From IMG/VR virus record IMGVR_UViG_3300025770_001492, positions 62,001-126,000 of that record: DNA of 64,000 nt. The stretch is one strand, 5' to 3'. The notes under the pieces were generated by a model. That model worked only from the letters and a program-made list of their open reading frames with translations, was not told where the DNA came from and searched no databases. Shown here piece by piece: positions 27,974 to 58,364 of this stretch. Both the position numbers and the translations under genes were made by a program. Within the stretch, counting starts at the first letter, position 1; every line of letters begins with the position of its first letter.

Positions 27974-28324
27974 TCAACAACTAAAGCTAGACCCGCATCC
28001 ACAATTGGACTTTGCGTTTGGATTTGTAAACGCAAATCCACGCTTATTTATATCTTCATGAAAGTCTATCACTGTGCCATCCATATGAATGAGAGACTTT
28101 TTATCAATAACAACTTTCAAATCTTCTTCTTCCTTTAAAATGTAGTCATCTTCTGTGACCTCAGAATCATCTATGAACCCCAATTGATACTGGAATCCGC
28201 TGCACCCTCCTCCAACGACTCCTACTCGTAACACATTGACTTCAATTTCTTGATCTTTAATAGTTGATCTGACCTCTTTTAAAGCCTTTTCTGTGATTTC
28301 TACATTTATTTCTACATTTGCCAT
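27974..28324 (-). CDS. iscA: IscA/ErpA (HesB) A-type Fe-S carrier
   Basis: GGGCSGFQY and CGCGSSF; GGAG SD before ATG at 28324. Confidence 0.93.
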   Translation of the reverse strand: MANVEINVEITEKALKEVRSTIKDQEIEVNVLRVGVVGGGCSGFQYQLGFIDDSEVTEDDYILKEEEDLKVVIDKKSLIHMDGTVIDFHEDINKRGFAFTNPNAKSNCGCGSSFSC

Positions 28325-28326
28325 GA

Positions 28327-29409: not shown

Positions 29410-29424
29410 CGACTTATTCCCGAT

Positions 29425-29973: not shown

Positions 29974-29981
29974 ATTTTTAT

Positions 29982-41611: not shown

Positions 41612-41612
41612 C

Positions 41613-42026
41613 TTATACCTTAAAAACGAGTCCTTTGTTCCTGAGAAAAGTAACGATACTAATATCTTTTCCCATGTCATCTGTGACACGAATGTCAACG
41701 ATCCAAAACGAGTCTTTTTTTTCCTTCAAAACACAACGAGGATTTGTGCTAGAATTGAACAACTTGATCAATTCATCCTTTGCCTTGTAAGAAGATGTAA
41801 CTTCTAGAAAGGCCCAAACTTTCCTTCCGTCTTCAAGAACCAATTCAAACTCGTGACCAGAATTAACCCTTACTTGATTTATTCCAAAAACTCCAAAAGA
41901 ATCAACAATTCCAGATGTGGAATTGTTTGAAAATGGAGACTTTATACTACACATGACAACAAAGTTTGACAAAAGCAAAACAATCAAAATAAGCTTTAGC
42001 AAAGTATTTTTATTCATTTTAACCAC
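41613..42026 (-). CDS. membrane-anchored protein, weak thermonuclease (SNase)-like pattern
   Basis: N-terminal TM; OB-like strands and a C-terminal FLRNKGL helix; catalytic residues not evident. Confidence 0.35.
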   Translation of the reverse strand: MVKMNKNTLLKLILIVLLLSNFVVMCSIKSPFSNNSTSGIVDSFGVFGINQVRVNSGHEFELVLEDGRKVWAFLEVTSSYKAKDELIKLFNSSTNPRCVLKEKKDSFWIVDIRVTDDMGKDISIVTFLRNKGLVFKV

Positions 42027-45029: not shown

Positions 45030-47762
45030 TTATATTCCCACTATTGTAAAGCCTTCATCGTTTATATCTTTCAAAAGCTTTTCCTCTGCCTTGGAAGGCT
45101 CATGCTTTATTTCAACTTGTTCCGGTTTAGCCATGACGACGAGTCTGCCATCTGCTGCTTTTTCAGGTAGCTCCGAACGATTTCGTTTGGTCGGACTCTG
45201 AAAAACGTGACTGCTAAATCCGGGATCAGGTCGATTGATCCTCATTCTAAGAAAGTTACCTTGGCGGAATTCTCCGTCCCAATGCTCTATTTCTTCCTTA
45301 AATCTAACAAAATCATCTTCCCACATCGTCACCAGTCTTGTGTTAAAATTTTCATCTTGAACAGTAAAAACATAATAAGGATTTCCCTTTTTAGAAAGCC
45401 TCTCCTGTAATGATGACTCCTTTTTAGGAAGCCCTTTTTTATCCAAGCTTACTATCTGACATTCAATTGGTGCCCAAAGCAAGGTTGATTCCTCATCAAA
45501 ACGGTCAAAAGTCATTCCGCCTTTATAGTCAGGGCTGAACTCTATAGGATGCTGCCATGCGAATCCATAATACATCGATTCTGCAATGCCTAGCAACTCG
45601 TTGTAAACATTTTCAAATCCCGTGTCGATTTCTCCAGAAGGCATAAAATCAGCAAGAGTGATTGGCAGATCAGAATCTTTCTTCTTCTTCAAAGATTCGA
45701 CGTTTCTCTTGTACTTCTTTCCAATCTTTAAAATGTCTTCCAAATCATCTTTTAAGTGTTGGAAATTAAAATTCTCAAATTCAAATTCAGAAATGAAGAA
45801 ATCTTTCTTAGGCAAATCTAATAAACCGCTTTTCAGAATCTCTTTTAAAAAGTTTTCAGAGGAACCATCGCCCCCATTCTTGTAAAGAACGTAGTCCATC
45901 TCTTCTACAATTTTTAATTTAGATTTATCCGCACGCTTATCTCTGTCCTGACGCTTTTTTGTTTCATGTTTAAAGTACTCCCAAAATTCATGGAGCACCT
46001 TTCTGTCTTCCTCTTCTCCGAAGCAATTTAAGGCAATCAAAGGCTTTAGAACTTTTGAATCTGTGCCAAATCTTTGCAAGAAGTCATCAAATCCACTGTA
46101 TGGCTGTCCTTCCTCGATCTTATGAGAGACATCTTCCCCTATTCCCTTAATGTCAGAGAAGCCCATATAGACCAAATCATCAACAATTTCCCAGTTCCAA
46201 CCTGATTTGTTGATGTCTACCCTTTTTAGCTCTACACCATCTTTCTCTGCCTCAAGTTTGTAATCTTTAATTTTACCTGACTGGGTTTCGCATTGCAAAG
46301 TTCCACAATAAAACTCAATTGGAAAATGTGCCTTCAAGTAAAGAAGCCTAGACGAAATATAAGAATATGCGTAAGCGTGGCTTGCGTTAAATCCGTACTC
46401 TGAAAAAGCTTCCACTTGATCCCACAGTTCTTCAACTTCTTTCTTTTCCCAGCCGAGATTTGATTGCCCACGACCAACGAACTGCTCTTTATATCGAGCA
46501 AACTCCTTAACCTTTTTCTTACTCATTGCTTTTCTGACTTTTTCGCAATGAATAAGCGGAATGTCTCCCACGACATTCAAAATTTTCATAACCTGTTCTT
46601 GGTAAACCATAACTCCATATGTTCTGCCAAGAATTGGCCTGAGAATCGGATGCAAATCTCCATCCATGTCTGGAACTGGATTACTAACAGGCTCTTGTCC
46701 TCTTTTTCGCCTGATGTACGTTTTATCCATGTCCATATTAAGAGGGCCGGGTCTGTACAGAGCAGAATAAGCAGGTAAATCATCAAACCCTGTTACACCG
46801 CCTTTTTTAACCATCTCACGCATTCCATTAGAATCAAACTGGAAAATGCACTTTAGCTTTCCTTCATCCGCTAAAGCAATTGCTTTAGGGTCATTCAGAT
46901 AGGCAGTATCAGACCAATCGTCATCCGTGCCATCCAAAGCAGATATTGTCTTTATGTGAGGATGATTCCTTTTGACTAACTCGCTGATGGTTACAATTCT
47001 TTTCAAATCCGTAACAACCAAGAGGTCAAATTTAATCAAACCCAAAGGGCCTAAGTCGGTTCCAGACAGCCCTTCCACAAATGCAGAAACATAAGCGTCG
47101 TCTTTGCCCTTAACCAGTGGAACCAGTTTATTGATTCTTTGATCAGAAATGATTAGCCCACCAGCATGCATTCCCATTCCACGATTGCGATTTAAAAGCC
47201 TACGGGCAGCGTCTGCAACATCTGGATTGTCTTCGCAATATTTGCCCAATTTCTCAAATTGCTCTAAAGCTTTATCGAAAGTAAGAGTCTTGCCATCATT
47301 ATCTTTCAAGCCAAGCTGAGTGGTTAGTCCTATAATTTCATTTCGATCCTTATCATGGACCTTGGCCATATCAATTAAAGAACTTTTTATTCCGTAAGTT
47401 GTGTAGTTGCCAATTGCGCAAACATTTTCTTTTCCAAACTCTTTCGGTGCCCACTCAACCTTTAGATAATCACGAACTTGAGGTAAGTAATCTATATCAA
47501 TATCTGGAAACTCGCCCTGTACAGAAACTGGTGGCAAATTTATGTCGAAATCATCGACCAAGTCTAAAAGATAAGCAATTAAAAGATTGTTTTCATTGTT
47601 TTCAAATTTAGCTTTTTTAGAATGAAGATCTACAAAATACTCATGTTCCGCCTGAGCATCAAGCTCTTTAAGCTCCTCTCTTAATCGCTCTTTATATTCA
47701 GAAGAATCTAAGCCCTTTTTGGACATTCCTTCCACGCAAAGTTTTAGTAGTTGATCTCTCAT
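45030..47762 (-). CDS. dnaE: DNA polymerase III alpha, C-terminal polypeptide (catalytic palm, fingers, HhH, OB)
   Basis: FPDIDIDY, HAGG, KFDLL, FQFDS, ALYRPGP, YQEQVM, YGFNASHA and KAHFP; no PHP, no GPGRGS, no intein. Confidence 0.95.
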   Translation of the reverse strand: MRDQLLKLCVEGMSKKGLDSSEYKERLREELKELDAQAEHEYFVDLHSKKAKFENNENNLLIAYLLDLVDDFDINLPPVSVQGEFPDIDIDYLPQVRDYLKVEWAPKEFGKENVCAIGNYTTYGIKSSLIDMAKVHDKDRNEIIGLTTQLGLKDNDGKTLTFDKALEQFEKLGKYCEDNPDVADAARRLLNRNRGMGMHAGGLIISDQRINKLVPLVKGKDDAYVSAFVEGLSGTDLGPLGLIKFDLLVVTDLKRIVTISELVKRNHPHIKTISALDGTDDDWSDTAYLNDPKAIALADEGKLKCIFQFDSNGMREMVKKGGVTGFDDLPAYSALYRPGPLNMDMDKTYIRRKRGQEPVSNPVPDMDGDLHPILRPILGRTYGVMVYQEQVMKILNVVGDIPLIHCEKVRKAMSKKKVKEFARYKEQFVGRGQSNLGWEKKEVEELWDQVEAFSEYGFNASHAYAYSYISSRLLYLKAHFPIEFYCGTLQCETQSGKIKDYKLEAEKDGVELKRVDINKSGWNWEIVDDLVYMGFSDIKGIGEDVSHKIEEGQPYSGFDDFLQRFGTDSKVLKPLIALNCFGEEEDRKVLHEFWEYFKHETKKRQDRDKRADKSKLKIVEEMDYVLYKNGGDGSSENFLKEILKSGLLDLPKKDFFISEFEFENFNFQHLKDDLEDILKIGKKYKRNVESLKKKKDSDLPITLADFMPSGEIDTGFENVYNELLGIAESMYYGFAWQHPIEFSPDYKGGMTFDRFDEESTLLWAPIECQIVSLDKKGLPKKESSLQERLSKKGNPYYVFTVQDENFNTRLVTMWEDDFVRFKEEIEHWDGEFRQGNFLRMRINRPDPGFSSHVFQSPTKRNRSELPEKAADGRLVVMAKPEQVEIKHEPSKAEEKLLKDINDEGFTIVGI

Positions 47763-47768
47763 ATGAAA

Positions 47769-47797
47769 TTTATAACCTAAATCAATTACATTTGCAA
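47769..47797 (-). promoter_or_regulatory. putative promoter of the C-terminal dnaE gene
   Basis: TTGCAA-N17-TATAAA, 6 nt before the ATG. Confidence 0.35.
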
Positions 47798-47798
47798 C

Positions 47799-48200
47799 TT
47801 ATCTTTTTCTTTTGACAACATTTGAATCTTTTCTCTTTCTTCTTCTTTTTGGCTTTTCTTCCTCTTTTTCTTCCTCAACCGGAATAGGTTCTGGATCGAG
47901 TTGAAGAACAGACGAATCGGTCCACTTATGTCGATCCCACACCTGAACTGAACGGTTAAATTTTTGAAAAACCTTTTCTGCCTCGGTTTTTAAATCTTTT
48001 AAAGTGTTGCTTTCCTTGTAGTGAACGTAACAATTAGGATTATCTTCTTTAGACAAACCTAGAACATATCTGAACTCGTATTTGACCATTCCATATTCAT
48101 CAAATTCTAATTCAATTTTAGGTTTTTCTTCTTCGCCTTCTATTATTTCCTCTTCTATTATTTCCTCTTCTTTAATCTTCCTCTTTCTTCCCATTTTCAT
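47799..48200 (-). CDS. hypothetical protein with charged termini
   Basis: Likely start MKMGRKRK. Confidence 0.6.
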   Translation of the reverse strand: MKMGRKRKIKEEEIIEEEIIEGEEEKPKIELEFDEYGMVKYEFRYVLGLSKEDNPNCYVHYKESNTLKDLKTEAEKVFQKFNRSVQVWDRHKWTDSSVLQLDPEPIPVEEEKEEEKPKRRRKRKDSNVVKRKR

Positions 48201-48504
48201 TCCAGTATATTTGAGTGTGTTTATTGTTTTTGGAAAGCCATTCATGAACGTGATGGAGTGTATCAATACAATCTTGCTCAGTGAAATCCTTTAGCCTCTT
48301 TTTCTTTGGGAAATATGAATACTCTGAACTATCCGACCAGCCCTCGCCAGCAAGCTCCATCCCAAAGAGACCTTCTGCGTGCCCTAGAAACGAAGCCAGG
48401 AGAGACGTTACGTCTTGCAATTGTTTTAATTCATCAGAACTCATTTTTAATCCCAAATTAAAGTGCTTCTGTACCAATCCTTGACCCAAAAATGATCTCT
48501 CCAC
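48172..48504 (-). CDS. hypothetical protein
   Basis: ORF tiling in the operon; true start probably MSSDE. Confidence 0.5.
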   Translation of the reverse strand: MERSFLGQGLVQKHFNLGLKMSSDELKQLQDVTSLLASFLGHAEGLFGMELAGEGWSDSSEYSYFPKKKRLKDFTEQDCIDTLHHVHEWLSKNNKHTQIYWNENGKKEED

Positions 48505-48704
48505 ATGGGGTCAAGTTTATATGGATGCTCTTTGTAATAATCCATTAATTTTATATTCAGCATCCCTTTCATTTTGGCATACTCTACAGGATCTATTTCT
48601 TGGCCGCAATCCTGGCATGTATAGCTCCCAATTAAACTATACATGCCATTAAATGTTGCATTGTCGTGTTCGCAGATTAAGTCATCATAACTCTGATGCA
48701 TCAT
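48447..48704 (-). CDS. zinc-finger-like hypothetical protein
   Basis: CEH...CQDC; AAGGAAG upstream. Confidence 0.55.
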   Translation of the reverse strand: MMHQSYDDLICEHDNATFNGMYSLIGSYTCQDCGQEIDPVEYAKMKGMLNIKLMDYYKEHPYKLDPMWRDHFWVKDWYRSTLIWD

Positions 48705-48813
48705 CTGGGGCTTCCTTGAAAAAGTCTAAGGGGTATTCAACAACCGCACCTGTCTCCAACGGCTGAATTTCAAAAATCAAACTCAAGTCAACATATTGCC
48801 CGTGAAATATCAT

Positions 48814-49212
48814 TTAATGATCTCCCTCAAATATGTTTCCAATTACTTCTATTTCACCCAGAAAATCACAATGTAACCAACCGCCGTTGGGAACCCAGAT
48901 TCCCCAACATAGATTATCTAAAGTTTGATCACTGTTCCACTCAACAAACCCAACATATCTTTCGCCGCCAATATCTGAGTTGTCAAAAACAACTTTATCT
49001 CCCTCGTAAATGTCAACTCCATTTTTATCTACAAGACCAATCCACTGCTGAGTAATGATGCCTTCTATTGGATGTGACAACCGATGACAATTATGGCAGT
49101 CACTAGGGTTGGGACGAAAGCTGCTGCTGCATATGCCACGATTGCCAATATGCAGATTTTCCCTGAACATGCCAGAGCTTTGATCCCAGAATCTAAACCT
49201 AAACCTACTCAA
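48814..49212 (-). CDS. YopX family protein
   Basis: FRFRFWD...QWIGLVDKNGVDIYEGD...EVIGNIFE. Confidence 0.9.
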   Translation of the reverse strand: MSRFRFRFWDQSSGMFRENLHIGNRGICSSSFRPNPSDCHNCHRLSHPIEGIITQQWIGLVDKNGVDIYEGDKVVFDNSDIGGERYVGFVEWNSDQTLDNLCWGIWVPNGGWLHCDFLGEIEVIGNIFEGDH

Positions 49213-49231
49213 GTCATCTCCAATTTAAACC

Positions 49232-49450
49232 TCAATTATTTTCCGCAAATATCTCGTTAAAATAAGCCCTCGACGCTTCAGCGGTATCGTATCCGCTTGG
49301 ATTAGTCTCCATGAAATCAGCAACATCTGCCGATGGACCAATTTGAACTAATTCTTCAAAGCATTCACGACATATGTAACCGTATGTATGAGAGTACCTT
49401 TCACACATGACGTTAGGACAATTTCCTCTGGCACAGGGAAGAACACTCAT
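49232..49450 (-). CDS. Cys-rich hypothetical protein
   Basis: CARGNCPNVMC...ICRECF; AAGGA SD. Confidence 0.6.
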   Translation of the reverse strand: MSVLPCARGNCPNVMCERYSHTYGYICRECFEELVQIGPSADVADFMETNPSGYDTAEASRAYFNEIFAENN

Positions 49451-49480
49451 TTCTTTTCCTTTGATATTAGAGTTTCAAAC

Positions 49481-49509
49481 ATCTTAAAAAAATGTCACGC
49501 ATGAGTCAA
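49481..49509 (-). promoter_or_regulatory. sigma70-like promoter
   Basis: TTGACT-N17-TAAGAT. Confidence 0.6.
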
Positions 49510-49544
49510 TAAAAAAAAGCTCAGTCATGCTTCATAACTCATAA

Positions 49545-49577
49545 TAAAAAAGCTCCCCTCGCAATGCGAGGGGAGCT
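49545..49577 (-). terminator. intrinsic terminator of tmRNA
   Basis: 12-bp GC-rich stem agctcccctcgc/gcgaggggagct plus U-tract. Confidence 0.88.
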
Positions 49578-49581
49578 TCAG

Positions 49582-49937
49582 TGGACCGGACGGGAGTCGA
49601 ACCCGTGTGTTGCGCTACCTATTCAAAAGCGTCTACCTGTATAGTTTGATGTTTGAGTTTCGCATCATTAAACCACAACAAACAAAGGTTTAAATCAACT
49701 ATCAAACAACGAGTCTTAGTTCAAAAGTAGTTTGATTTGCTTTGAACGCATCCAGTATTGCGGCAAGTTGTCAAACGTCACTGGCAGACCTTTGAAACTT
49801 GGGCTACTTATAATTAAGCAGCCATAGCGAAATTAGTTTTGTCAACTAAATTTTTAATCGGATTTTTAAGGAGCCTTCCGATCAACTCCTACAGGCAACT
49901 CAAGAACTCAACAGCCAATCGATACCATTTCCAGCCC
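49582..49937 (-). ncRNA. ssrA: tmRNA, tag (A)DKTNFAMAA
   Basis: Acceptor stem GGGCTGG/CCGGTCC-A with G3.U70; T arm ACGGG-TTCGACT-CCCGT; tag frame 49843-49814 GAC AAA ACT AAT TTC GCT ATG GCT GCT TAA after TTTAGTT; CCA not encoded. Confidence 0.95.
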
Positions 49938-49947
49938 GTGTGTTTTA

Positions 49948-49976
49948 GTTATACGCAAAAAAGATATTTTTGTAAA
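49948..49976 (-). promoter_or_regulatory. sigma70-like promoter of tmRNA
   Basis: GTTTACA-N17-TATAAC. Confidence 0.6.
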
Positions 49977-49984
49977 CTTAATTT

Positions 49985-50305
49985 CTAATTTTTATGAGCA
50001 TCTGCCCATTTTGAATCTTCTGGAATGTCGTGTGTTTTGACGTAATCTCGCCACTTTTCATATCCATAAAGATCGATATATTCGCCTCTTCTTAGAGATC
50101 TTTTTTCTTCTGCCTGCTTGAGAATCTTTTTCCTATCTTGATCAAGCTTTGGATAATCGGCACGACCAGATTGCTGCGATGCTGCTGTATTCGCCCTCTT
50201 TAGCTTCTTTTCAAAAGATTTACTAGTTTTTCTCAACTCTTCCCGTCCTTCTAAGAACTTAGAAAAATTCATAAAATATTCAGTCTGTTTGTTGTGTGAT
50301 TTCAT
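49985..50305 (-). CDS. basic hypothetical protein with capsid-targeting-like motif
   Basis: TATATA-N5-ATG at 50305; MNFSKFLEGREE motif from the internal ATG at 50272. Confidence 0.6.
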   Translation of the reverse strand: MKSHNKQTEYFMNFSKFLEGREELRKTSKSFEKKLKRANTAASQQSGRADYPKLDQDRKKILKQAEEKRSLRRGEYIDLYGYEKWRDYVKTHDIPEDSKWADAHKN

Positions 50306-50321
50306 ACTATTATATACCAGC

Positions 50322-50963
50322 ATGGTAAAAATATATTCCAACATATTTCCAGGAAAAATCACTGGCAGCGAATTCTGGAACAGGAATGGCCACTTAAATG
50401 ACACCATCTGCTTTCTAAATGATTATTACAAATTTAATTTTTTATGTATACCCAAAAATGCCTCGAACACCATACGTAAAGAGCTTAATTCCAAAAGAGA
50501 AAAACTATTTTCCAAACTGAACAAGGATGAACAACTTTATCCAATTATCTGCTTTGTAAGACCTGTGGATGATAGATTTTGGTCTGCTGTCAATACTATT
50601 TTGAGAAGAAAAAACGGCAGCACTAGAATGTTTTTAAGAAACTGCGATAGTATCGAGAAATTAGCAGATTACATTGCCTCCGGTAACGACCCGCACCTTG
50701 CATCCGTTTCCGTCTTAACATCAAACATAAAACACACGGACATACGTTGGTATGATTTGAAGGTTTTAGACCAACTTAACATTTGCCACCCAAGCATAAA
50801 TCGCAATTTTGACACTTTAGACACATTGAAGCAGCTTGACATATTTGGATCAAAAAAAATCCAATCTTATTATGAAAAAGATTTTGAAATTTATGAAAAC
50901 TCAAAAAAAGAGATTGAAAACATTAAGTTGAAGAAGTTATGTCATAAAAAAAGCCTGTTTTAA
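50322..50963 (+). CDS. sulfotransferase family 2-like protein
   Basis: FLCIPKNASNTIR (5'-PSB) and FVRP..RFWSA (3'-PB) motifs. Confidence 0.7.
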   Translation: MVKIYSNIFPGKITGSEFWNRNGHLNDTICFLNDYYKFNFLCIPKNASNTIRKELNSKREKLFSKLNKDEQLYPIICFVRPVDDRFWSAVNTILRRKNGSTRMFLRNCDSIEKLADYIASGNDPHLASVSVLTSNIKHTDIRWYDLKVLDQLNICHPSINRNFDTLDTLKQLDIFGSKKIQSYYEKDFEIYENSKKEIENIKLKKLCHKKSLF

Positions 50964-50977
50964 AAACAGGCTTTTTT
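50946..50977. terminator. bidirectional terminator between convergent genes
   Basis: aaaaaagcctgttt/aaacaggcttttt inverted repeat. Confidence 0.75.
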
Positions 50978-51002
50978 ATTTCGGCTTATGGAAATTCTTG
51001 TT

Positions 51003-51680
51003 TCATCTCATGTTCATATAGCTTTTCATGGCGTCAGGCATTCCATCTGGAAGTCTTCTTTCACTGTGTTTCGATCTTAATCTTTCGAGTGGACCCATTT
51101 CGTCATCCATGCCCTCTTCGTCGTCTTCCATGTCTTCGTCGTCAGCATCCATGTCCATTTCGTCGGCATCCATGTCTTCGTCGTCGGCATCCATGTCTTC
51201 GTCGTCAGCATCCATGTCTTCGTCGTCAGCATCCATGTCTTCGTCGTCAGCATCCATGTCTTCGTCGTCATCCATGTCATCTTCAGTGCCCATGGGAGGA
51301 CCAACCGCTTCGTTTTTATTTTGCATAAATGCATCAAAGCTTTCTGGCCATGTTTTTGCCTCTTTGCCGCTGGCATCTGTGTCTGGACTGTAGATTAAGT
51401 TTTTGTCGCCATCGTCTCCAAGTCCTTTTTCTTTGCCACCATCTGCAACTTGCATCCCAGGGTCTTTACCAGCAGCTTTGTATGGTGCAGGCTTAGAAGT
51501 TTTACTTCCAGCTACGTCTTCCATACCTTTTCCATCATCCTTTAACTTACGACCAGCCTGAGACTTCTCTGGAGAAGCTGGGGTTGGACCGTCATAGTCA
51601 GCAACTTTTTTAGTGCTTGCCTTTTCTCTCGTCTTGCTTCTAGAGTCTATATACTCGTTCCAAGTTTTCCAATTGTTCAT
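51003..51680 (-). CDS. low-complexity acidic protein with MDADDED repeats (candidate head scaffold or internal protein)
   Basis: N-terminal WKTWNEYI, Lys/Gly/Pro-rich middle and D/E/M tandem repeat; GGAG SD. Confidence 0.7.
   Translation of the reverse strand: MNNWKTWNEYIDSRSKTREKASTKKVADYDGPTPASPEKSQAGRKLKDDGKGMEDVAGSKTSKPAPYKAAGKDPGMQVADGGKEKGLGDDGDKNLIYSPDTDASGKEAKTWPESFDAFMQNKNEAVGPPMGTEDDMDDDEDMDADDEDMDADDEDMDADDEDMDADDEDMDADEMDMDADDEDMEDDEEGMDDEMGPLERLRSKHSERRLPDGMPDAMKSYMNMR
51128..51277. repeat. coding 21-nt tandem repeat (MDADDED)
   Basis: About 6-7 copies of catccatgtcttcgtcgtc(a/g)g with no spacers. Confidence 0.92.
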
Positions 51681-51688
51681 CTTTTCTC

Positions 51689-51871
51689 CTAATGTGCATT
51701 TTCTGCTATTAGCATTATAATTAATAAAATGAGATAAAGCCCTAGGCCAGTGCCGAAAAATACAATGCCTAAAACAAATCCTAGTCTAACTGTTGTAGGG
51801 TTGATGTTTAAGTCTCTTCCCAATCCTGAACAGACACCAAACAAAACCTTATTGCCAAGATCTCTCTTCAT
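51689..51871 (-). CDS. PspC domain protein
   Basis: KRDLGNKVLFGVCSGLGRDLNINPTTVRL; AGGAG SD before ATG at 51871. Confidence 0.88.
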   Translation of the reverse strand: MKRDLGNKVLFGVCSGLGRDLNINPTTVRLGFVLGIVFFGTGLGLYLILLIIMLIAENAH

Positions 51872-51937
51872 AATATACTCCTGTTTTATATTTAGTGTAT
51901 TATGTGCTTTTTTTTTAAAGCATAAAGTATATATTGT

Positions 51938-52258
51938 ATGCAATTCAGAAAATGGCTAATAAAAGAAATGGCTCACATATCAATTGATGAACCAATCGAC
52001 ATTGGAGATCAAAAAAATGTATCTATGATTGATATGCAGTTTGAACTATATCCCGACATGACCCAGACAACTCTAGCTCACTGGATAGTCAACGGATTTG
52101 CCGCCAAAGTCCCAAATAGCAATTATTATATAGTTTTTGACGGAAAAACAGGAAAAGCAAAGGTGTCCGATTCGACAGAGAACAAAATGCAAGTTCCTGG
52201 CGAATGGCACAAAATGGCTTATATGTCGAGCGATATGCCAGCTTGGAAATCTGCGTGA
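51938..52258 (+). CDS. hypothetical protein with capsid-targeting-like N-terminus
   Basis: MQFRKWLIKEMAH; TATATA-N4-ATG. Confidence 0.65.
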   Translation: MQFRKWLIKEMAHISIDEPIDIGDQKNVSMIDMQFELYPDMTQTTLAHWIVNGFAAKVPNSNYYIVFDGKTGKAKVSDSTENKMQVPGEWHKMAYMSSDMPAWKSA

Positions 52259-52259
52259 G

Positions 52260-53640
52260 TTATTGATCTGACCAAACACGATCAGTTCTTCCTAGAAAAG
52301 GCGCAGACTCAATTGCTTCGTCCATGGGAATGGGATCAATATTCGAAAAAGATGGTTCTCCCGAAAATCTAAACTTAATTTGTTTTCCGCCACGAGCAGG
52401 ACTCAAAAATCTAGAAAACAATAGACCATGCTTGATTGGATCGACATCCGTTATCCCAAGACAGTAGCAACTAAGAGCACCAACTGCCGAGCCTCTTCCG
52501 GGACCGACTGCCGAAGAACCGCTGGAGCCATATGTCTCAAAGTACCATCTTCTGGCTTCATCGGTCATCATTTTTTGGATCAAAAAGTAAGAGGAAAAGC
52601 CTTTTTGGCAAATTAAAGAATATTCTTCTTCTATCCTATCCAAATATTCTTTATTCCTAGGAATTTTCCTCTTAACAACCCCTTCTATGATTGATTCCTT
52701 AAACTTAATGTCAGATTCGCTAAATGCAGGAAGTTTGATAGTTCTATCAAGCTTTACGCCTTTTGCTTTTTCGCAAAGGGCAACGGTATTTAACTTGGCC
52801 TGCTTAAGTATTTCGTAATCTATTACATCCTTGTAATCACTTTCCCACTTCGCATTTATCTCTTCTTCTGACTTCATCCATAAGTTTGAATCTTGCAATT
52901 CGAACATATCAGCCATGTCATTCTGTGCCAACGCTTGTTCGATTTGCTTCATGGTTCTTCCTGTTTGAACCATAATCATCTTTCTCTGCATTTCGCTGTC
53001 TTCTTTGAGACAGTAGTGGCAATCATTTGTAACAATAATTGGTAAATTATATTTTTGGCTGGCTTTTATTATAAACTCATCATAAGGCTTTTGTTTCGAG
53101 AAGTCTAAAAGCATTATTTCTAGATAGAAGTTTTCTCCGAACATGGCCATATATTTTTCGACCATCTCCATAGCTGGACCTTCGCCACCCACATCAAAAG
53201 CTTGTCCAATTTCACTGTTATAACAGCAAGAAGTGAATATAATTCCTTCTTTATATTGCATGAGGACTTCGTGATTGACTCTGGGTTTCCTGTAGAAACC
53301 CCTCGTCCAACCCCAAGATGAAAGAGTAACCAGATTGCTGTAGCCTGTTTCATTATAGGCTATGGCAAGCAGATGATTCGATTTTCTTAACTTGGCTTGC
53401 TCTTCTTGCGTACCCAGACCTCTATTGAATTCCGTCATAGAAGGAATAGTGGTCGTGTCAGGCTGCAACTGATTTACATAAAGCTCACAAGCAAATATAG
53501 GCTCTAGGTTGTTTTCATCGCATGCTCTAATCTGGCGTGGGACAGAACCCATCGCACCATGATCTGATATGCATAAAAACTTTTGATTTACCTGTTTAGA
53601 ATATTTTCCATATTCTTCAACAGTGGCGTATCCATCTAAG
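52260..53640 (-). CDS. dnaE: DNA polymerase III alpha, N-terminal polypeptide, exon 2 (PHP domain and first palm segment)
   Basis: LDGY, SDHG, ACELY, NHL, NDCHY, GPGRGS and FSRFLSPAR, then a short unrelated tail and stop. Confidence 0.93.
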
Positions 53641-53863
53641 CACAAACTCCACAGTTTCTTGTGGTGTAGACTATATCATCACCCCGAAGGGTGTCGGACG
53701 CTCTGGCCTGTAATTAAGAGGACTGAACCTCTCAGGTAGTCGTTGCACGTTCCAAAAGTGTACTTCTGGCTTCGCTCAGGATTGCCCTCGACTTTACGTT
53801 AGGGTTTCCCTGAATTCATCCGATTTGCATGCAAGATTTCTCTCACATGGCCCCAGTTAGTTA
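53641..53863 (-). ncRNA. group I self-splicing intron, 223 nt, no endonuclease ORF
   Basis: P1 GCCU|UA..UGGGGC with U.G at the 5' splice site; P2 with GAAA loop; P3 UCGGAUG/CGUCCGA; P4 UUCAGG/CCUGAG; P7 GACUA/UAGUC; P8 with UUCG loop; P9; terminal omega-G. Removal restores HTDFSLLDGY. Confidence 0.93.
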
Positions 53864-53919
53864 AGGCTGAAATCAGTATGTCTGTGTAGATGTTCAAAAC
53901 CTACAATCAGGTCTTTCAT
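53864..53919 (-). CDS. dnaE: DNA polymerase III alpha, N-terminal polypeptide, exon 1
   Basis: AAGGAG-N6-ATG; MKDLIVGFEHLHRHTDFS+CT carrying the PHP HxH motif. Confidence 0.9.
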
Positions 53920-53979
53920 ATTTTACTCCTTTAGATTCAAGATACTTTTCAAATTCGCCAGCGTCATATTTGCCATTAT

Positions 53980-54504
53980 TTAATCTTTCCATTGTTTCCA
54001 TTTGCCCGTCTTTTCATTTTTAAAGTAAAAAGCAGCTTTTGGATCTTGTGTGTCTACCTTGAAGAAAGGCTCAGATCCTTTTCTGTTTCTGCACCACTTG
54101 TTTTCAACAGGCGACTCCAGCATGGCTTCACGATTTACAATGAACAGCCTTTTGTAATCGCCCCCGATTATCATCATATGAGTGGCATGCTCTTCTGCTT
54201 TGTCCCTTTTGCGGTAAGGGAAGTCCATTGTATGAAATTTGAAAGGAACGTCAAACCATTTTGTTCCCCAATCTTGCTTTATCTCGGCCTCAATTCTCCA
54301 TTCACCGATACTCTTTTTTGAATGCGTTCCAGCAACATCCCATATCTTTTTAAATTTTCCTCTGCTCTCGTCTAAGTTCTCTGATATTTTTTTGAATCCA
54401 CGTTGTTGTAAAAATTCCGTTGCCACTAGCTTTGCAGGTCCATCATACTTTTCGTACCTATCTTTGCAAAACCTTATATCATTAGGTTTTGGCATCAAAT
54501 ACAT
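53980..54504 (-). CDS. PD-(D/E)XK nuclease-like protein
   Basis: WDVAG...IEAEIKQDW pattern. Confidence 0.55.
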   Translation of the reverse strand: MYLMPKPNDIRFCKDRYEKYDGPAKLVATEFLQQRGFKKISENLDESRGKFKKIWDVAGTHSKKSIGEWRIEAEIKQDWGTKWFDVPFKFHTMDFPYRKRDKAEEHATHMMIIGGDYKRLFIVNREAMLESPVENKWCRNRKGSEPFFKVDTQDPKAAFYFKNEKTGKWKQWKD

Positions 54505-55208
54505 TCCTTAAACTTAGAGCATCTCCTTATCTTTGCTATAGTTTCGAAACCTTTGGTTCCCAAAATCCCATCAGCAAAGCCGTAGTACACTGCCTCTTCC
54601 GCAGACATGTACCAATCACTCTTATCCTTGAGCTTTTTATCTATCCAAGATATAATTCGTGATTCTGTGTATTCTTTCTCTAAAAAGAACTCTCCAATCT
54701 TACAGCGTCTAGCAAATATTTGCAACATACGTTTCATATATTTATTATTCATTTCCACAGCGGAGTTTACAGCTATGGAGTTATCATGCAAAGCTATAGA
54801 ACCATGGTGAATCATGAATTCACAATTAGGCGTTAAAACTCTTTTATCAGCCGCTTGCAACAAAATTCCACTCATAGAAGAAGCTTGTGCATAAGTAACA
54901 AACGTGACTGATGAGTTTGCAAATCTAATTGCATCAAACATCGCTAACCCATCGCACCAACTTCCGCCAGTAGAATGCATGTGTACCAGTACGTTTTCAG
55001 AATTCTGATTCTCTAAAACAGATAAATTTTTATTAAATCTAACTGCCATTCTGTAATCTACACCTGGTTCGGAATCGTCAGACAAAGGGCTTAAAGAACT
55101 GTGCAGAAAGAGTTCTCTTGTATAGTGATTGATATTGTGAGAGTGAACATCGCTGAGAAGCTGTTCAATTTCCGACTTTTTACGCAAACTATTTTTCGTT
55201 GTAGCCAT
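54495..55208 (-). CDS. clpP: ClpP-like ATP-dependent protease proteolytic subunit
   Basis: STGG, ASSM (Ser), MIHHG (His) and DWYMSAEEAVYYGFADGI (Asp); GGAGG before ATG at 55208. Confidence 0.88.
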   Translation of the reverse strand: MATTKNSLRKKSEIEQLLSDVHSHNINHYTRELFLHSSLSPLSDDSEPGVDYRMAVRFNKNLSVLENQNSENVLVHMHSTGGSWCDGLAMFDAIRFANSSVTFVTYAQASSMSGILLQAADKRVLTPNCEFMIHHGSIALHDNSIAVNSAVEMNNKYMKRMLQIFARRCKIGEFFLEKEYTESRIISWIDKKLKDKSDWYMSAEEAVYYGFADGILGTKGFETIAKIRRCSKFKECI

Positions 55209-55319
55209 CGCAACCTCCAAAAAAGTCTTTATTTAATTCACTATTATATATCTGATTTATATTCTATTTATCTTTTTTAACTTCCTTCCTAGGAAAATAT
55301 TAAAACTATTAACTTCAAA

Positions 55320-55360
55320 AATGTTCATAAGTCCTTTTATTTAAAGAACTTATGAACATT
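55320..55360. other. 13-bp inverted repeat between spoVR and clpP
   Basis: aatgttcataagt (55320-55332) / acttatgaacatt (55348-55360). Confidence 0.5.
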
Positions 55361-55458
55361 ATGATCTTTAGAGATCCCATTCTCAGCCTCAGATTGTTTA
55401 TCACTCATTGCTTACATCCCTTTTGACTTTCTTTAATGCTTTTAGCAGGTCGAACACC

Positions 55459-57051
55459 CTATAGCGATTCGTATTCTTCTCTGGTCATGACGGCCACATC
55501 GCCATCCTGTGTTCCTACGCACCAATAAACTATTTCTTCGTCATCGGAACCAGTAGTAGACAACACCACATCATTCCCCCAAATGAATCTTAAAGACTTT
55601 AAAGTGGGGATTAAATCCGGCTCATACAAGCCTCTGCCATCGGAGTTGTGCTCTAGCAACATGACTCCCTTGCCTTGGTGGTTTGGATCTACTAGATATA
55701 TCTCTGGCAAGCCTCCATTCAAATGTCTTTTGATCAACTTACTTTTGATTGACTTGTGGTCACGATTTTCAATCTTGTACTCGCCATTTGGATATCTTTT
55801 CCATTCAAAAAACTCATATTTATTACAAAAATCTTCTGTGAAAAACTCCATCAAAGCTGTTAGGTCATTATATTGCTTTCGAACATCAAATATTTTATCT
55901 CTGCCTAGACCTAGATTCTTATCCCAATTTTCTTTTTCTACTATATTGCTACATTCTTCGTACTCTTGGCCAAACTTGCCTTTATTCCACCTCTCTTCGA
56001 TATCCAACAAAAGACAGAATCCTAGCTTATAAGGATTCATCGAATACTTGCCTCCGAGAACGCCCATCTTGTGAGCGGAGTATTCAACGATGCCGCAGTC
56101 TTCGCCTGTCTGCCCTAAGCCACAAAGTCCCATTTCACACATTACTGTATAATCTGTAAAGCTTGCCCATCCTTCGTTGAGCATTTTTGTAACTCTTTGA
56201 GGCGAAAAATATAAACTTTCCTCATACATCATGGAAAGAATGTCTGACTGCCAAGGTTTCAAAGGAGCACTATCTCTTAAAAATCCCATAATGTCTTTAG
56301 TTGGATTTTTAAATATTCCAATTTGCTGTGCGGCCTCATCTCGACTAATCTTTTCTTTTTGGCCATCAATCCATCTTTTAGGATTGATATAAGGCTCCAT
56401 GTAATCACGGTCAGAATTTACACCTAACCTTTTAGGCTGCTTGTAGGTTCTCTCATCTTGTATGACACGATCTTTTACAACCTTTTCTTCCCAAGCCTTC
56501 GCTGAGTCTATCAAAGTTTCAATCGAGCAGCAGTGGTCGATAAATTCTGTAACTTTCTCCACGCCCCAACGCTGCATGTATTTTCGGATGCGGGTTCCAT
56601 GATTAGCAAGTTGGTTCATCATATTTTGCGAGGTGGGCGCAAAATATATGTTGTTCTTAAAAAAGTCATTGTGGCCTAAAGCGTGAGCAATAACCGTAAC
56701 ATTATCCACCAGCGTATTTGAATCCAAACAGTAGATGTAACAAGGATTGGTATTAATAACCATTTCATAAATTCGGTGCATCCCATGCTCGTAACCTTTT
56801 TGAAGGCTTTCGTATTCCATTCCCCATTTCCAGTGTGGGTAACGAACTGGAAATCCTCCGTAAGATGCAACTTCACTTATTTCATCGTAAGTCAGCATCT
56901 GAACAACGGTGGGATAAAAATCGCAGCCGAAGTCTTTAACTGCCTTGAATATGTCAGGCATAATCTTCTTAAGCTCACTAGGAAGCTGAACGCCTGGCAC
57001 AGTGCTGTCACCGAGAAGCAGAGAAGAGCCTCTGAAAAATTTACTAGACAT
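55459..57051 (-). CDS. spoVR: SpoVR/YcgB family protein
   Basis: GFPVRYPHWKWG, IYEMVIN..PC, VIAHALGHNDFFKN, TKMLNEGWASF and NPYKLGF. Confidence 0.95.
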   Translation of the reverse strand: MSSKFFRGSSLLLGDSTVPGVQLPSELKKIMPDIFKAVKDFGCDFYPTVVQMLTYDEISEVASYGGFPVRYPHWKWGMEYESLQKGYEHGMHRIYEMVINTNPCYIYCLDSNTLVDNVTVIAHALGHNDFFKNNIYFAPTSQNMMNQLANHGTRIRKYMQRWGVEKVTEFIDHCCSIETLIDSAKAWEEKVVKDRVIQDERTYKQPKRLGVNSDRDYMEPYINPKRWIDGQKEKISRDEAAQQIGIFKNPTKDIMGFLRDSAPLKPWQSDILSMMYEESLYFSPQRVTKMLNEGWASFTDYTVMCEMGLCGLGQTGEDCGIVEYSAHKMGVLGGKYSMNPYKLGFCLLLDIEERWNKGKFGQEYEECSNIVEKENWDKNLGLGRDKIFDVRKQYNDLTALMEFFTEDFCNKYEFFEWKRYPNGEYKIENRDHKSIKSKLIKRHLNGGLPEIYLVDPNHQGKGVMLLEHNSDGRGLYEPDLIPTLKSLRFIWGNDVVLSTTGSDDEEIVYWCVGTQDGDVAVMTREEYESL

Positions 57052-57056
57052 ATTTT

Positions 57057-58289
57057 TTATCCTTGAATCTTCTTTTCTATTAAACCCGGTTTTCCTAATA
57101 AATCAATAATTGCTTCTCTGATTTTTACGTCTCTTTCTTCCTCTGAAATTTCAGAAGCAGGCCCCCAACTAGATACATTGTCTTCTGAGTCAGACATTAT
57201 ATCTGTGGTCACAACGTTAGAAGGAGGGCTTTCCGACATTAAAACATTCTCATCTACATATTCTTTCAAGCTTCCCTTGTATCTCCAAGGCAAAATTTGA
57301 GCTATTCCTATAAAGTTGACAATATCTTCTGTGAATTGATCTTTTATTATTTTTGAAAAGACTTCGTTGTCATTGTCCCAGTTTTCCCCGTCAGTAAAAT
57401 AAATTACGTACACATTCCACTTTTCAGGAGGAAACCTATTTTCCATCTGCTTTGAAATTAATTTCAAAGCAGATGAACATGTTGTTCCACCACCATATCG
57501 GTATTTATAGAATCTTTTCTCATCAACTTCCGAAGCTTCTGTGTCGTGCCAAATATAACATCTTTCGACACGTTTATAAAACTGCCTTATCCATAAATCT
57601 ATCCACCAAGACATATCGCTAACAATATCACACTTTGTCTGGTCCATTGAAGCAGATCCATCACGAGCGAAAAATATAACAGCATTGCTCGATGGAACTT
57701 TTATTTCTTTATATCGCCTATACCTGCGATCACTGTTTATCGGCATGATCATTTTTACAGGCTCCTTCATGCCGGGAATGGCATGGAGTTTTTCCAATTC
57801 TCCAGAAGCAGCCATTCTCTTCATGGCTTGCTGCATAGTTCTTCGATTGTGCCTTAAGGATTCTGGACCTTGTAATGAAATATCATTGTATTTAATTTTA
57901 ATTTCATCATAAGTTTGATTTGGCTTTGGCTTTAAATCAGGAAGTTCTAATTCATCCTGAAGAAATTTTAAAACATCTTCCAAGTCTATGGATATAGTAA
58001 CGCCATCAGATTGTCCTTGTCCTGCCTTGCCCTTGCCTTTTCCATCGCCTGGATCATCTCTCCCAACTACGTCTCCAGGTTTTCCACCGCCACGTCCGAC
58101 TCCCTCGCCACTATTCCCATAAACAATATGTGGTATGTCTATTTTTGGGATTGTGATGTTTATCTTTTTCCCATCTCCACGAGTTCTAAATATAGATCCG
58201 TTTTTAATCCTCTTTTGAAGATCTTTTCTTATTCGGCCAGAATAAACATCTCTAAATCTTTTGTGGTCTTCTTCAATACGTCTTGGCAT
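57057..58289 (-). CDS. yeaH: YeaH/YhbH (DUF444) vWA-like protein
   Basis: Gly-rich GRGGGKPGD segment, MIDAS-like DGSASM, GGGT..SSA and FTDGENW. Confidence 0.93.
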   Translation of the reverse strand: MPRRIEEDHKRFRDVYSGRIRKDLQKRIKNGSIFRTRGDGKKINITIPKIDIPHIVYGNSGEGVGRGGGKPGDVVGRDDPGDGKGKGKAGQGQSDGVTISIDLEDVLKFLQDELELPDLKPKPNQTYDEIKIKYNDISLQGPESLRHNRRTMQQAMKRMAASGELEKLHAIPGMKEPVKMIMPINSDRRYRRYKEIKVPSSNAVIFFARDGSASMDQTKCDIVSDMSWWIDLWIRQFYKRVERCYIWHDTEASEVDEKRFYKYRYGGGTTCSSALKLISKQMENRFPPEKWNVYVIYFTDGENWDNDNEVFSKIIKDQFTEDIVNFIGIAQILPWRYKGSLKEYVDENVLMSESPPSNVVTTDIMSDSEDNVSSWGPASEISEEERDVKIREAIIDLLGKPGLIEKKIQG

Positions 58290-58310
58290 TACTGAACCCT
58301 TTAGTAGTCT

Positions 58311-58351
58311 AAAATAAAGAGCCACCCCCACAAAGAAGTGAAGAGTGGCTC
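58311..58351 (-). terminator. terminator-like hairpin between prkA and yeaH
   Basis: GAGCCACTCTTCAC-TTCTTT-GTGGGGGTGGCTC followed by TTTATTTT. Confidence 0.55.
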
Positions 58352-58364
58352 ATCCTCTTTATAT

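What the first reader, a model, noticed from the sequence alone, without database searches (positions are those of the whole stretch)
45030..53919. Intein-free, two-gene DnaE polymerase with a duplicated palm segment
Seen: DnaE is cut between the GPGRGS/RFL.P.R segment (end of the 52260-53919 gene) and the catalytic PDIDIDY (start of the 45030-47762 gene). About ten other ORFs and a tmRNA lie between the two genes. Neither junction carries intein motifs: no Cys/Ser-initiated N-intein after RFLSPAR and no HN-C/S before PDIDID. The C-gene begins with a diverged second copy of the segment that ends the N-gene (EYKERLREELKELDAQAEHEYFVDL...LIAYLLDL versus EYLDRIEEEYSLICQKGFSSYFLI...LSCYCLGI), and this copy has lost GPGRGS. 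Established: the known cyanobacterial split DnaE is rejoined by a split intein; phage Aeh1 NrdA is a precedent for an enzyme working as two unspliced polypeptides. Inference: this is a heterodimeric family-C polymerase with a composite palm, in which the duplicated helices may form the dimer interface. The PHP keeps its metal ligands (HxH, D, DHG, E, H, DxH), so the proofreading exonuclease would be a separately expressed subunit.
Basis: partly seen in the sequence, partly recalled or inferred. Interest (0 to 1): 0.82.

Follow-up and report, generated by a model that had tools for sequence, protein, structure and literature searches.

The report
Two-gene phage DNA polymerase, conserved
A marine giant phage encodes its DnaE-type replicative DNA polymerase as two separate genes cut through the active-site domain (one of them also holds a self-splicing intron). 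Hundreds of related phages do the same, so the enzyme almost certainly works as two unjoined proteins.

Summary
DnaE is cut between RFLSPAR (N-gene, 52260-53919) and PDIDID (C-gene, 45030-47762). About eleven ORFs, a tmRNA and a strong terminator lie between the genes. Neither junction has intein or intron signatures. The C-gene does start with a diverged second copy of the palm segment that ends the N-gene.

1. The N-gene is not one ORF. A 223-nt ORF-less group I intron (53641-53863) splits PHP motif I.
2. The split is not peculiar to this genome. More than 2,000 N-only and several hundred C-only halves occur on contigs of up to 634 kb. They share a conserved tail and head, and the gap between the halves ranges from 3.8 to about 11 kb.
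3. The N-half also keeps a dead copy of the catalytic strand, with K/R in place of the two Asp. About 100 residues are therefore duplicated, and each copy has lost the complementary motif.

Best reading: this is a non-covalent two-subunit family-C polymerase that arose by overlapping duplication. The closest precedent is the split "minimal" Pol III alpha of group 2.2 jumbo phages (Iyer et al. 2021). That enzyme is cut at the same subdomain boundary but lacks PHP and the other Pol III domains. Intact relatives nest among the split N-halves, which points to re-fusion or repeated fission. Assembly and activity are untested.

The parts
53864..53919 (-). dnaE-N exon 1 (56 nt; MKDLIVGFEHLHRHTDFSL, with PHP ligands H12 and H14)
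   Evidence: The ATG is at 53919. The unspliced reading frame stops at a TAA 5 nt into the intron.
53641..53863 (-). Group I intron, 223 nt, without an ORF, inserted inside the FSL|LDG codons of PHP motif I
   Evidence: Rfam RF00028, 90.7 bits, E 7e-22, full model. P1 pairs GCCU|U with GGGGC, P10 pairs UUAG with CUAA, and the last intron base is G (read). Joining the exons gives one 478-aa ORF. The 94%-identical intron-less homologue P0001/L002 reads ...FSLLDGYATVEEY at the same place.
52260..53640 (-). dnaE-N exon 2: the rest of PHP, then the NTP-binding half of the Pol-beta-like palm, a tail and the stop
   Evidence: Pfam PHP 1.5e-28 and PF07733 positions 17-98. AlphaFold model of the 94% homologue: pLDDT 86. 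Foldseek against Taq, Mtb and E. coli alpha: E about 1e-25.
52488..52505 (-). GPGRGS (the GS nucleotide-binding motif of the palm), present only in the N-half
   Evidence: Invariant in alignment A2 and invariant or nearly so in A4. In some relatives it is the site of an intein insertion, GPGRG|C...HN|S. Coordinates checked.
52362..52679 (-). N-copy of the duplicated palm segment (N aa 340-445), ending in the pseudo-strand QIKFRFS
   Evidence: This is the most conserved stretch of the N-half (0.82 mean majority frequency). In the intact relatives the junction reads AR[DNK]D.PD.D.DF. The N-tail ARGGK-.MKLRF aligns with one gap, placing K/R (or V/E, V/D) at the two catalytic Asp positions.
52260..52391 (-). 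N-tail after RFLSPAR (GGKQIKFRFSGEP...APF...), which has no counterpart in intact DnaE
   Evidence: RGG is invariant (K/R usually follows) and the strand that follows is conserved. The rest varies and is often acidic, ending in ..ECPF. pLDDT is below 50 in the monomer model.
47763..52259 (.). Variable island between the halves: 11 small ORFs (YopX, PspC, an acidic-repeat protein and others), a tmRNA (49579-49937, minus strand) and an intrinsic terminator (49549-49579, minus strand)
   Evidence: The gap is 3.8 kb in L002, 9.9 kb in L008 and about 10-11 kb in L006 and L007/L014. Its content differs even among relatives 90-97% identical. No homing endonuclease was found.
47508..47762 (-). C-head (C aa 1-85): a diverged second copy of the palm helices, with invariant N56 and N59 where the N-copy has S and G of GPGRGS..G
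   Evidence: Alignment A1, hhalign, head-only HMM. The C profile aligns to E. coli alpha from residue 317. pLDDT is 79-95.
45030..47762 (-). dnaE-C: head, then the Mg-binding half of the palm (PDIDID at 47490-47507; K244 and D246), thumb, fingers (YRPGP, GFNASH), HhH and a C-terminal OB fold
   Evidence: Pfam PF07733 positions 100-259, PF17657 1.3e-39, PF14579 9e-13. AlphaFold pLDDT 87. Foldseek against Taq Pol III alpha 3e0d: E 4e-32, plus SSB/PriB-like hits to the C-terminal end.

Best explanation
This is the replicative family-C (DnaE-type) polymerase of a huge marine phage, made as two separately transcribed and translated subunits that are never joined covalently.

Subunit N is 478 aa after a group I intron is spliced out of its mRNA. 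It carries a complete PHP proofreading site and the nucleotide-binding half of the palm (GPGRGS). Subunit C is 910 aa. It carries the metal-binding half of the palm (PDxDxD plus the K..D strand), thumb, fingers, HhH and OB.

The two subunits most likely dock so that the GS element of N sits against the Asp strand of C, rebuilding the Pol-beta-like active site in trans.

The split arose by a duplication that left about 100 residues in both genes. Each copy then lost the complementary motif. The C-copy lost GS and now has an invariant N..N. The N-copy lost the two Asp and now has K/R. What is left, the C-head and the N-tail, is kept by selection and probably serves folding or docking.

Shown: the split, its conservation, the absence of joining elements, the duplication, and the complementary motif loss. 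Inferred: physical association, the trans active site, and the roles of the head and tail.
For: The cut is exact in the Pfam palm model, and no third dnaE copy lies in the window.

The family is large. 2,428 N-only homologues were found, and the top 120 are 422-697 aa (59-94% identity), all but a few 422-484 aa. 771 C-only homologues were found, mostly 840-950 aa. Many sit on contigs of 200-634 kb.

Gene order is collinear. Both flanks are syntenic (PrkA-DUF444-SpoVR-ClpP-..-N upstream; C followed by 162-aa and 198-aa genes and PhageMetallopep downstream). The interval between the halves varies from 3.8 to about 11.4 kb.

The same DNA is held in at least 16 marine and seawater runs from at least 13 studies, and independent contigs tile the stretch.

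A strong terminator and two opposite-strand ORFs lie between the halves.

Catalytic residues are invariant but distributed: GPGRGS in N; D87, D89, D91, K244, D246, R337, P338 and H462 in C.

The N-copy of the duplicated segment is the most conserved part of N (0.82). The C-head scores 0.57, above the linker and OB regions.

Inteins sit in GPGRG|S in some N-halves, which marks that site as constrained.

The N-tail is disordered alone (pLDDT below 50), and the C junction at aa 81-90 has pLDDT 50. Both fit elements that order on assembly.

Iyer et al. 2021 reached the same conclusion for a split minimal Pol III alpha.
Against: No direct evidence shows that N and C bind each other or that either is active.

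The C-head is confidently folded (pLDDT about 90) and has invariant Asn at the GS positions. It might occupy the native palm position and make C self-sufficient.

Only 64 kb of the genome is in hand, so another polymerase could be the main replicase.

The one metatranscriptome that holds this DNA has almost no coverage of it. Neither transcription of the two halves nor intron splicing is shown.
Confidence: 0.68

Rival explanations
1. The C-subunit is a self-contained polymerase. Its own head fills the palm, with N..N replacing GS. The N-subunit is a separate PHP exonuclease or pyrophosphatase, and its palm fragment serves only as a docking or structural module.
For: The C-head is homologous to the missing palm helices, is confidently modelled, and has invariant N56 and N59 at the GS positions. 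In all split lineages the N-half ends with its own pseudo-strand, as if each half were a closed folding unit.
Against: GPGRGS and the surrounding segment are the most conserved part of the N-half, and inteins target that site. That is hard to explain for a mere docking module. The C-head lacks the LLFSRFL helix and is less conserved than the catalytic palm. Alone, the C-head does not find any solved DnaE.
Confidence: 0.2
2. The halves are joined after all, either by an unrecognised split intein (protein trans-splicing) or by RNA trans-splicing or a very long intron.
For: Cyanobacterial DnaE is joined by a split intein. This same gene already holds a group I intron, and relatives hold inteins.
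Against: Neither half gives a Hint/intein Pfam hit, although canonical inteins are detected in relatives. The N-tail is 13-110 aa long, variable, and lacks an N-terminal Cys or Ser. The C-head ends in GEF and the next residue is Pro, which cannot serve as the nucleophile. An Rfam scan at E<=1 of 47000-54200 finds only the tmRNA and the one intron, and nothing at either junction. A terminator and opposite-strand genes lie between the halves. The head and tail are conserved as protein, with their own start and stop codons.
Confidence: 0.03
3. The two genes are decaying remnants of a disrupted dnaE, or an assembly artefact.
For: A mobile-looking island lies inside the gene.
Against: There are thousands of homologues with intact catalytic residues at 43-94% identity. 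The same arrangement appears in many independent assemblies and runs.
Confidence: 0.01

Closest known systems
Split 'minimal' DNA polymerase III alpha of group 2.2 jumbo phages (Iyer, Anantharaman, Krishnan, Burroughs, Aravind 2021, Viruses 13:63; PMC7824862)
   Same: A family-C catalytic module divided into two proteins encoded by distant genes. The cut lies between the N-terminal NTP-binding subdomain and the C-terminal Mg2+- and DNA-binding subdomain. The authors predict that the two reconstitute one enzyme.
   Different: The published version is described as minimal, with no PHP and no other Pol III domains, and it accompanies a family B polymerase. Here the N-half has a full PHP with all ligands, and the C-half has thumb, fingers, HhH and OB. 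I could not fetch their sequences, so direct homology of the two split events is untested.
Intact DnaE of huge phage LR756511.1 (595 kb) and M. tuberculosis-type DnaE1 with a PHP proofreader
   Same: Same domain order and catalytic residues. LR756511.1 is 56% identical to N and 39-45% to C. The PHP ligands are identical to those of Mtb DnaE1.
   Different: It is a single 1179-aa ORF with the junction RFLSKFRKDYPDVDVDF, and it has no head, tail or intron.
Cyanobacterial split DnaE joined by the DnaE split intein
   Same: dnaE lies in two distant genes (own knowledge; mentioned in PMC3919608).
   Different: That split lies in the fingers, at ..EY|CFNKSH, which is intact here (EYGFNASH in C). It carries intein halves; none are present here.
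Phage enzymes that work as unspliced fragments: Aeromonas phage Aeh1 NrdA split by mobE, and split gp43 polymerases of some T4-like phages (own knowledge)
   Same: An essential phage replication enzyme is cut inside a conserved domain and functions as two polypeptides.
   Different: Those splits are recent and are caused by a homing endonuclease gene. Here no HEG lies between the halves, the split is ancient and family-wide, and about 100 residues are duplicated.
'Fractured genes' (Dassa et al. 2009, PMC2677866)
   Same: Conserved enzyme genes from metagenomes are broken in two, with other DNA between the pieces (abstract).
   Different: Those are bridged by split inteins and have a free-standing endonuclease between the halves. 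Neither is found here.

Membership tests
Family-C DNA polymerase, DnaE type | PHP domain with the nine metal ligands | tested here: met
   Pfam PF02811 1.5e-28. All ligands align with Mtb DnaE1. The invariant columns are listed.
Family-C DNA polymerase, DnaE type | Pol-beta-like palm with a GS motif, a DxD strand and a third Asp | tested here: met
   All are present and invariant, but on two proteins. GPGRGS is in N. D89, D91, K244 and D246 are in C.
Family-C DNA polymerase, DnaE type | Thumb, fingers, HhH (beta-binding) and OB domains | tested here: met
   PF17657 and PF14579. Foldseek against 3e0d, 7pu7 and 2hnh, plus OB hits.
Family-C DNA polymerase, DnaE type | One polypeptide carrying the whole catalytic core | tested here: not met
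   Two genes 4.5 kb apart, and no intact copy in the window.
Family-C DNA polymerase, DnaE type | Template-directed DNA synthesis and 3'-5' exonuclease activity | not testable with these tools
   This needs biochemistry.
Split-intein-joined DnaE (cyanobacterial type) | N-intein after the N-extein, and a C-intein ending in HN followed by Cys, Ser or Thr | tested here: not met
   No Hint/intein Pfam hit. The tail starts GGK and the head ends GEF|P.
Split-intein-joined DnaE (cyanobacterial type) | Break in the fingers at ..EY|CFNKSH | tested here: not met
   EYGFNASH is continuous in C at aa 455-462.
Split minimal Pol III alpha of group 2.2 jumbo phages | Cut between the NTP-binding and Mg-binding subdomains, with the halves in distant genes | tested here: met
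   against the description in PMC7824862.
Split minimal Pol III alpha of group 2.2 jumbo phages | Minimal architecture: no PHP and no other Pol III domains | tested here: not met
   PHP, fingers, HhH and OB are all present.
Split minimal Pol III alpha of group 2.2 jumbo phages | Co-occurs with a family B polymerase | not tested
   Only 64 kb of the genome is in hand. None was seen among the ORFs scanned.
Group I intron (the interruption of the N-gene) | Conserved catalytic core scoring above Rfam's threshold | tested here: met
   RF00028, 90.7 bits against 50, full length.
Group I intron (the interruption of the N-gene) | A U.G pair at the 5' splice site, a terminal G, and removal that restores the frame | tested here: met
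   Read. The intron-less homologue has the same junction.
Group I intron (the interruption of the N-gene) | Splicing observed in RNA | tested here: inconclusive
   The only RNA run has almost no coverage of the gene.
Gene split by a homing endonuclease (Aeh1 NrdA type) | A homing endonuclease gene between the halves | tested here: not met
   Pfam on ten of the eleven intervening ORFs (eight of them also against PHROGs) gave only YopX, PspC and phrog_22735. The 42-aa ORF was not scanned.

The most novel reading that the evidence does not exclude
A replicative polymerase whose active site is built in trans from two polypeptides. It arose by an overlapping duplication of about 100 residues, after which each copy lost the complementary catalytic motif: GS was kept only in N and DxD only in C. 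The dead copies were retained as assembly elements. In one lineage (LR756511.1, P0247, P0250) the gene was later re-fused seamlessly. The alternative to re-fusion is that fission happened at least twice at the same position.
Probability: 0.35. Interest if true: 0.75.

Novelty: new variant of a known kind. Interest (0 to 1): 0.6.

Why it matters
Family-C polymerases are treated as single-chain catalytic cores. A natural, widespread version cut between the nucleotide-binding and metal-binding halves of the palm is a ready-made system for several questions. It could show how that active site assembles, which elements are needed for folding and which for catalysis, and how a PHP proofreader on a separate chain communicates with the polymerase site.

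It is also a clean example of gene fission by duplication and complementary degeneration in a virus. One clade of intact genes nests among the split forms.

On the practical side, gene callers and annotators split or mislabel these genes. Sources name the halves "PHP domain-containing protein" or "hypothetical protein". The intron hides the true start of the N-gene.

Tried and rejected
- Megablast of the whole locus against GenBank phages found only the 47-nt intron core. No close cultured relative exists.
- Cultured Bacillus and Geobacillus phages that matched the N-half turned out to have intact DnaE of about 1030 aa.
- The C-head profile alone against PDB sequences found nothing at E<=1. 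Homology had to be shown through the N-segment profile, the intact relative and a head-only HMM.
- Rfam at E<=1 across 47000-54200 gave no intron halves at the junctions.
- Literature searches for a split full-length DnaE in jumbo or huge phages returned only Iyer et al. 2021. The PaBG, BONAISHI and RsoM2USA papers were irrelevant. Supplementary files of Iyer et al. are not held, so their accessions could not be compared.
- I tried to pair the deeper split N-halves (P0261, P0265) with their C-halves. The contigs are only 2-4 kb.
- Covariation between N-tail type (K/R versus V/E) and the C-head could not be tested. All N-C pairs I could link by contig are of the K/R type.
- Read laying gave no RNA evidence for or against splicing.
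- Model coordinates and PAE are not returned, so where the C-head sits relative to the palm could not be examined.
- One call failed on wrong coordinates and was repeated correctly.

Full report
**What is in the sequence**

All genes of the region lie on the minus strand. The C-gene (45030-47762) encodes 910 aa, and the catalytic strand PDIDID is at aa 86-91.

The N-gene starts at the ATG at 53919, but it is not one ORF. After 56 nt the frame runs into a TAA. Rfam finds a full-length group I intron at about 53648-53873 (RF00028, 90.7 bits against a cut-off of 50). Three features place the intron at 53641-53863 (223 nt, no ORF): the P1 pairing (GCCU|U with GGGGC), a 4-bp P10 (UUAG with CUAA) and the terminal G. 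Joining 53919-53864 to 53640-52260 gives one 478-aa ORF.

The junction reads ...HTDFSL|LDGYATVEEY. The 94%-identical homologue P0001, which has no intron, reads the same at that place. Its DNA (L002) differs only by a synonymous Leu codon beside the insertion site. The intron cuts PHP motif I between the HxH and the Asp ligand, so a complete PHP needs splicing.

**The cut**

Pfam's palm model PF07733 (260 positions) is covered at positions 17-98 by N and 100-259 by C. N carries PHP (1.5e-28). C carries fingers (PF17657, 1.3e-39) and HhH (PF14579).

AlphaFold models of C (pLDDT 87) and of the 94% homologue of N (pLDDT 86) match the corresponding parts of Taq, M. tuberculosis and E. coli Pol III alpha. 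Foldseek E-values are 4e-32 for C and about 1e-25 for N. C ends in an OB fold.

The PHP ligands (H12, H14, D21, H46, E71, H108, Cys in TSCC, D225, H227) align residue for residue with Mtb DnaE1. In Mtb DnaE1 the PHP is the proofreader (PMC5636811 abstract).

A tblastn search with an intact relative finds no third dnaE copy in the window.

**Between the halves**

The interval 47763-52259 holds nine minus-strand and two plus-strand small ORFs. Only YopX, PspC and one PHROG of unknown function are recognisable, and there is no homing endonuclease. It also holds a tmRNA (49579-49937, 112 bits) followed by a 14-bp-stem terminator on the same strand.

An Rfam scan at E<=1 finds no intron-like RNA at either junction. 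Pfam finds no Hint/intein domain in N or C. It does find inteins in relatives at other sites, for example inside GPGRG|C...HN|S. The residue after the junction in C is Pro. Joining by protein splicing or by RNA splicing is therefore very unlikely.

**It is a family, not an accident**

A search with N exon 2 returns 2,428 homologues. The top 120 are N-only proteins of 422-697 aa (most 422-484; 59-94% identity), many on contigs of 200-634 kb. A search with the first 330 residues of C returns 771 homologues, typically 840-950 aa, and nearly all cover the head.

In the closest relative (L002, 107-kb contig) the order N - island with tmRNA gap - C is the same, with a gap of 3.8 kb. The gap is 9.9 kb in L008 and about 10-11.4 kb in L006 and L007/L014.

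Both flanks stay syntenic. Upstream lies PrkA-DUF444-SpoVR-ClpP-..-N. Downstream, C is followed by 162-aa and 198-aa genes and PhageMetallopep.

The window's own N-gene sequence is held at 0.9-1.0 word share in at least 16 marine or seawater runs from at least 13 studies. Independent contigs tile the stretch. A relative 90-97% identical lacks 48560-49546 of the island. Misassembly and decay are excluded.

**The duplication**

The intact 1179-aa DnaE of huge phage LR756511.1 matches the window twice. Its aa 21-433 match N and its aa 336-1179 match C, so about 98 residues are present in both genes.

Three results support homology of the C-head with the N-segment:
- Profile-profile comparison of 31 C-heads with 29 N-ends gives 90.8% probability, E 1.2e-6.
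- A head-only HMM, with the PDxDxD strand removed, hits 113 DnaE sequences, always just upstream of GPGRGS.
- The full C profile aligns to E. coli alpha from residue 317, and the N-segment aligns to residues 313-397.

In the C-copy the GPGRGS..G positions are occupied by an invariant N56..N59, and the LLFSRFL helix is missing.

Intact relatives read AR[DNK]D.PD.D.DF. N-halves read ARGG[KR].[MIL]K[LF]RF (or ..IVLEF..LVFDF). These align with one gap, so that K/R (or V/E, V/D) replace the two catalytic Asp.

Each gene thus holds the whole overlap but only one of the two catalytic motifs.

Conservation fits the N-copy being the working one. Mean majority-residue frequency is 0.82 for the N overlap (the highest in N) and 0.72 for RGG plus the strand. 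It is 0.57 for the C-head, against 0.72 for the catalytic palm of C and 0.40-0.50 for its linker and OB.

In the monomer models the N-tail is disordered (pLDDT below 50). The C junction at aa 81-90 is weak (pLDDT 50), while the C-head helices are confident.

**How it most likely works**

Two subunits are made from separate transcripts. N needs intron splicing. They associate non-covalently so that the GS element of N lies against the Asp strand of C. The PHP exonuclease travels on N. The head and tail, relics of the overlap, are kept for folding or docking.

The association and the trans active site are inferences. I could not co-fold the chains or inspect model coordinates.

The main rival is that C is self-sufficient, with its own head filling the palm, and that N is an accessory PHP subunit. 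The invariant GPGRGS, its top conservation and the inteins that target it argue against this rival but do not exclude it.

**Evolution**

The overlap points to duplication with complementary loss rather than a simple insertion.

In a careful tree of the N-part with the tails removed, the intact forms (LR756511.1, P0247, P0250; support 100/100) group with the close split N-halves. Deeper split lineages with the same RGG[KR] tail (P0261, P0265, P0269, P0270, P0274) branch outside. Forcing all split forms into one clade is rejected (AU p 0.0023, delta lnL 54). That group was named after the tree had been seen.

In the C-part tree the sampled split C-halves are one clade (97*), with the intact forms just outside. 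The C-halves of the deep lineages could not be recovered.

Either one lineage re-fused the gene, or fission happened more than once at this site. Still more distant N-only families (30-37% identity) also end right after a hydrophobic pseudo-strand. PHROGs holds N-only and C-only families with the same boundary.

**Comparison with what is known**

The cyanobacterial split DnaE is cut in the fingers and joined by a split intein. Neither applies here.

The closest precedent is the "minimal" Pol III alpha that Iyer et al. 2021 found in group 2.2 jumbo phages. It is split into an NTP-binding protein and a Mg2+- and DNA-binding protein encoded by distant genes, and the authors predict that the two reconstitute one enzyme (PMC7824862). 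That is the same subdomain boundary, but that version lacks PHP and all other Pol III domains.

Weinheimer and Aylward 2022 list PF07733 as the marker of their largest marine jumbo-phage cluster, without noting a split (PMC9123017).

I found no paper describing a full-architecture, PHP-bearing DnaE split in this way, nor the overlapping duplication. No member of this family is in the GenBank phage collection searched.

I rate it a new variant of a known kind, real and conserved, with the mechanism still to be tested.

Noticed in passing
window 53775-53828 (intron core): The conserved core of the group I intron is repeated elsewhere in the same metagenome: DNA contigs break there and run on into other sequences. 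A 47-nt stretch is 98% identical in oyster-associated phage contig PQ867849.1 and 92% identical in Vibrio phage phi 1. This looks like a mobile intron family shared among marine phages. The 94% relative lacks the intron.
   Followed up: partly
window 49748-49876 and 53744-53828: A 396-nt metatranscriptome contig (run X20) joins a tmRNA-like piece (87% identity) to the intron core (98% identity), with 179 nt between them. It is either a chimeric assembly of abundant RNAs or a relative's tmRNA gene carrying a related intron.
   Followed up: no
window 49549-49937 (-): A phage-encoded tmRNA (tag peptide DKTNFAMAA) is followed by a 14-bp-stem terminator. It sits in the island between the dnaE halves. 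In the close relative L002 an unannotated gap lies at the same place.
   Followed up: partly
window 54495-60479 (-): A PrkA (704 aa) - DUF444 (424 aa) - SpoVR (530 aa) - ClpP (241 aa) cluster lies directly upstream of dnaE-N. PrkA-DUF444-SpoVR is conserved in the same order in every relative examined (ClpP in all but L008), on contigs of up to 634 kb.
   Followed up: partly
relatives P0029, P0090, P0241-P0259; L007/L014: Many relatives carry inteins. They occur inside GPGRG|S and at other N-half sites, in C-halves (1250-1325 aa forms), and in a neighbouring 688-aa AAA ATPase.
   Followed up: partly
N-half C-termini (alignment A2; window 52260-52330): Many N-tails end in an acidic stretch with ..[DE][DE]CPF or ..PPEE.FAA; the window has ..ESAPF... 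From memory, this resembles the acidic, aromatic-tipped tails (SSB ..DDDIPF, T7 gp2.5) that dock replisome partners.
   Followed up: no
window 51003-51680 (-): A 225-aa protein with a long run of DEDMDADDEDMDAD-type acidic repeats. Contig breaks in several runs fall inside it.
   Followed up: no
window 50289-51002: About 0.6 kb more DNA than in relative L002, with a 224-aa plus-strand ORF without family hits. A hairpin at about 50920-50980 gives weak hits to terminator-containing sRNA and leader models on both strands.
   Followed up: no
window 9482-16831 (-): A 2449-aa ORF whose only hits are Laminin_G_3 (concanavalin-like) domains, probably a giant structural or adhesin protein.
   Followed up: no
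window 2415-3479, 8123-9091, 23525-31613, 40442-41698: A run of host-like metabolic and chaperone genes: GDP-mannose dehydratase/epimerase, amidoligase, full DnaJ, UDP-glucose dehydrogenase, aldehyde dehydrogenase, a TPP enzyme, and a DHH-family phosphoesterase.
   Followed up: no
window 139-201 (-): A tRNA-like element just above Rfam's threshold (31.7 bits against 29) with a truncated acceptor stem. ARAGORN did not call it.
   Followed up: no
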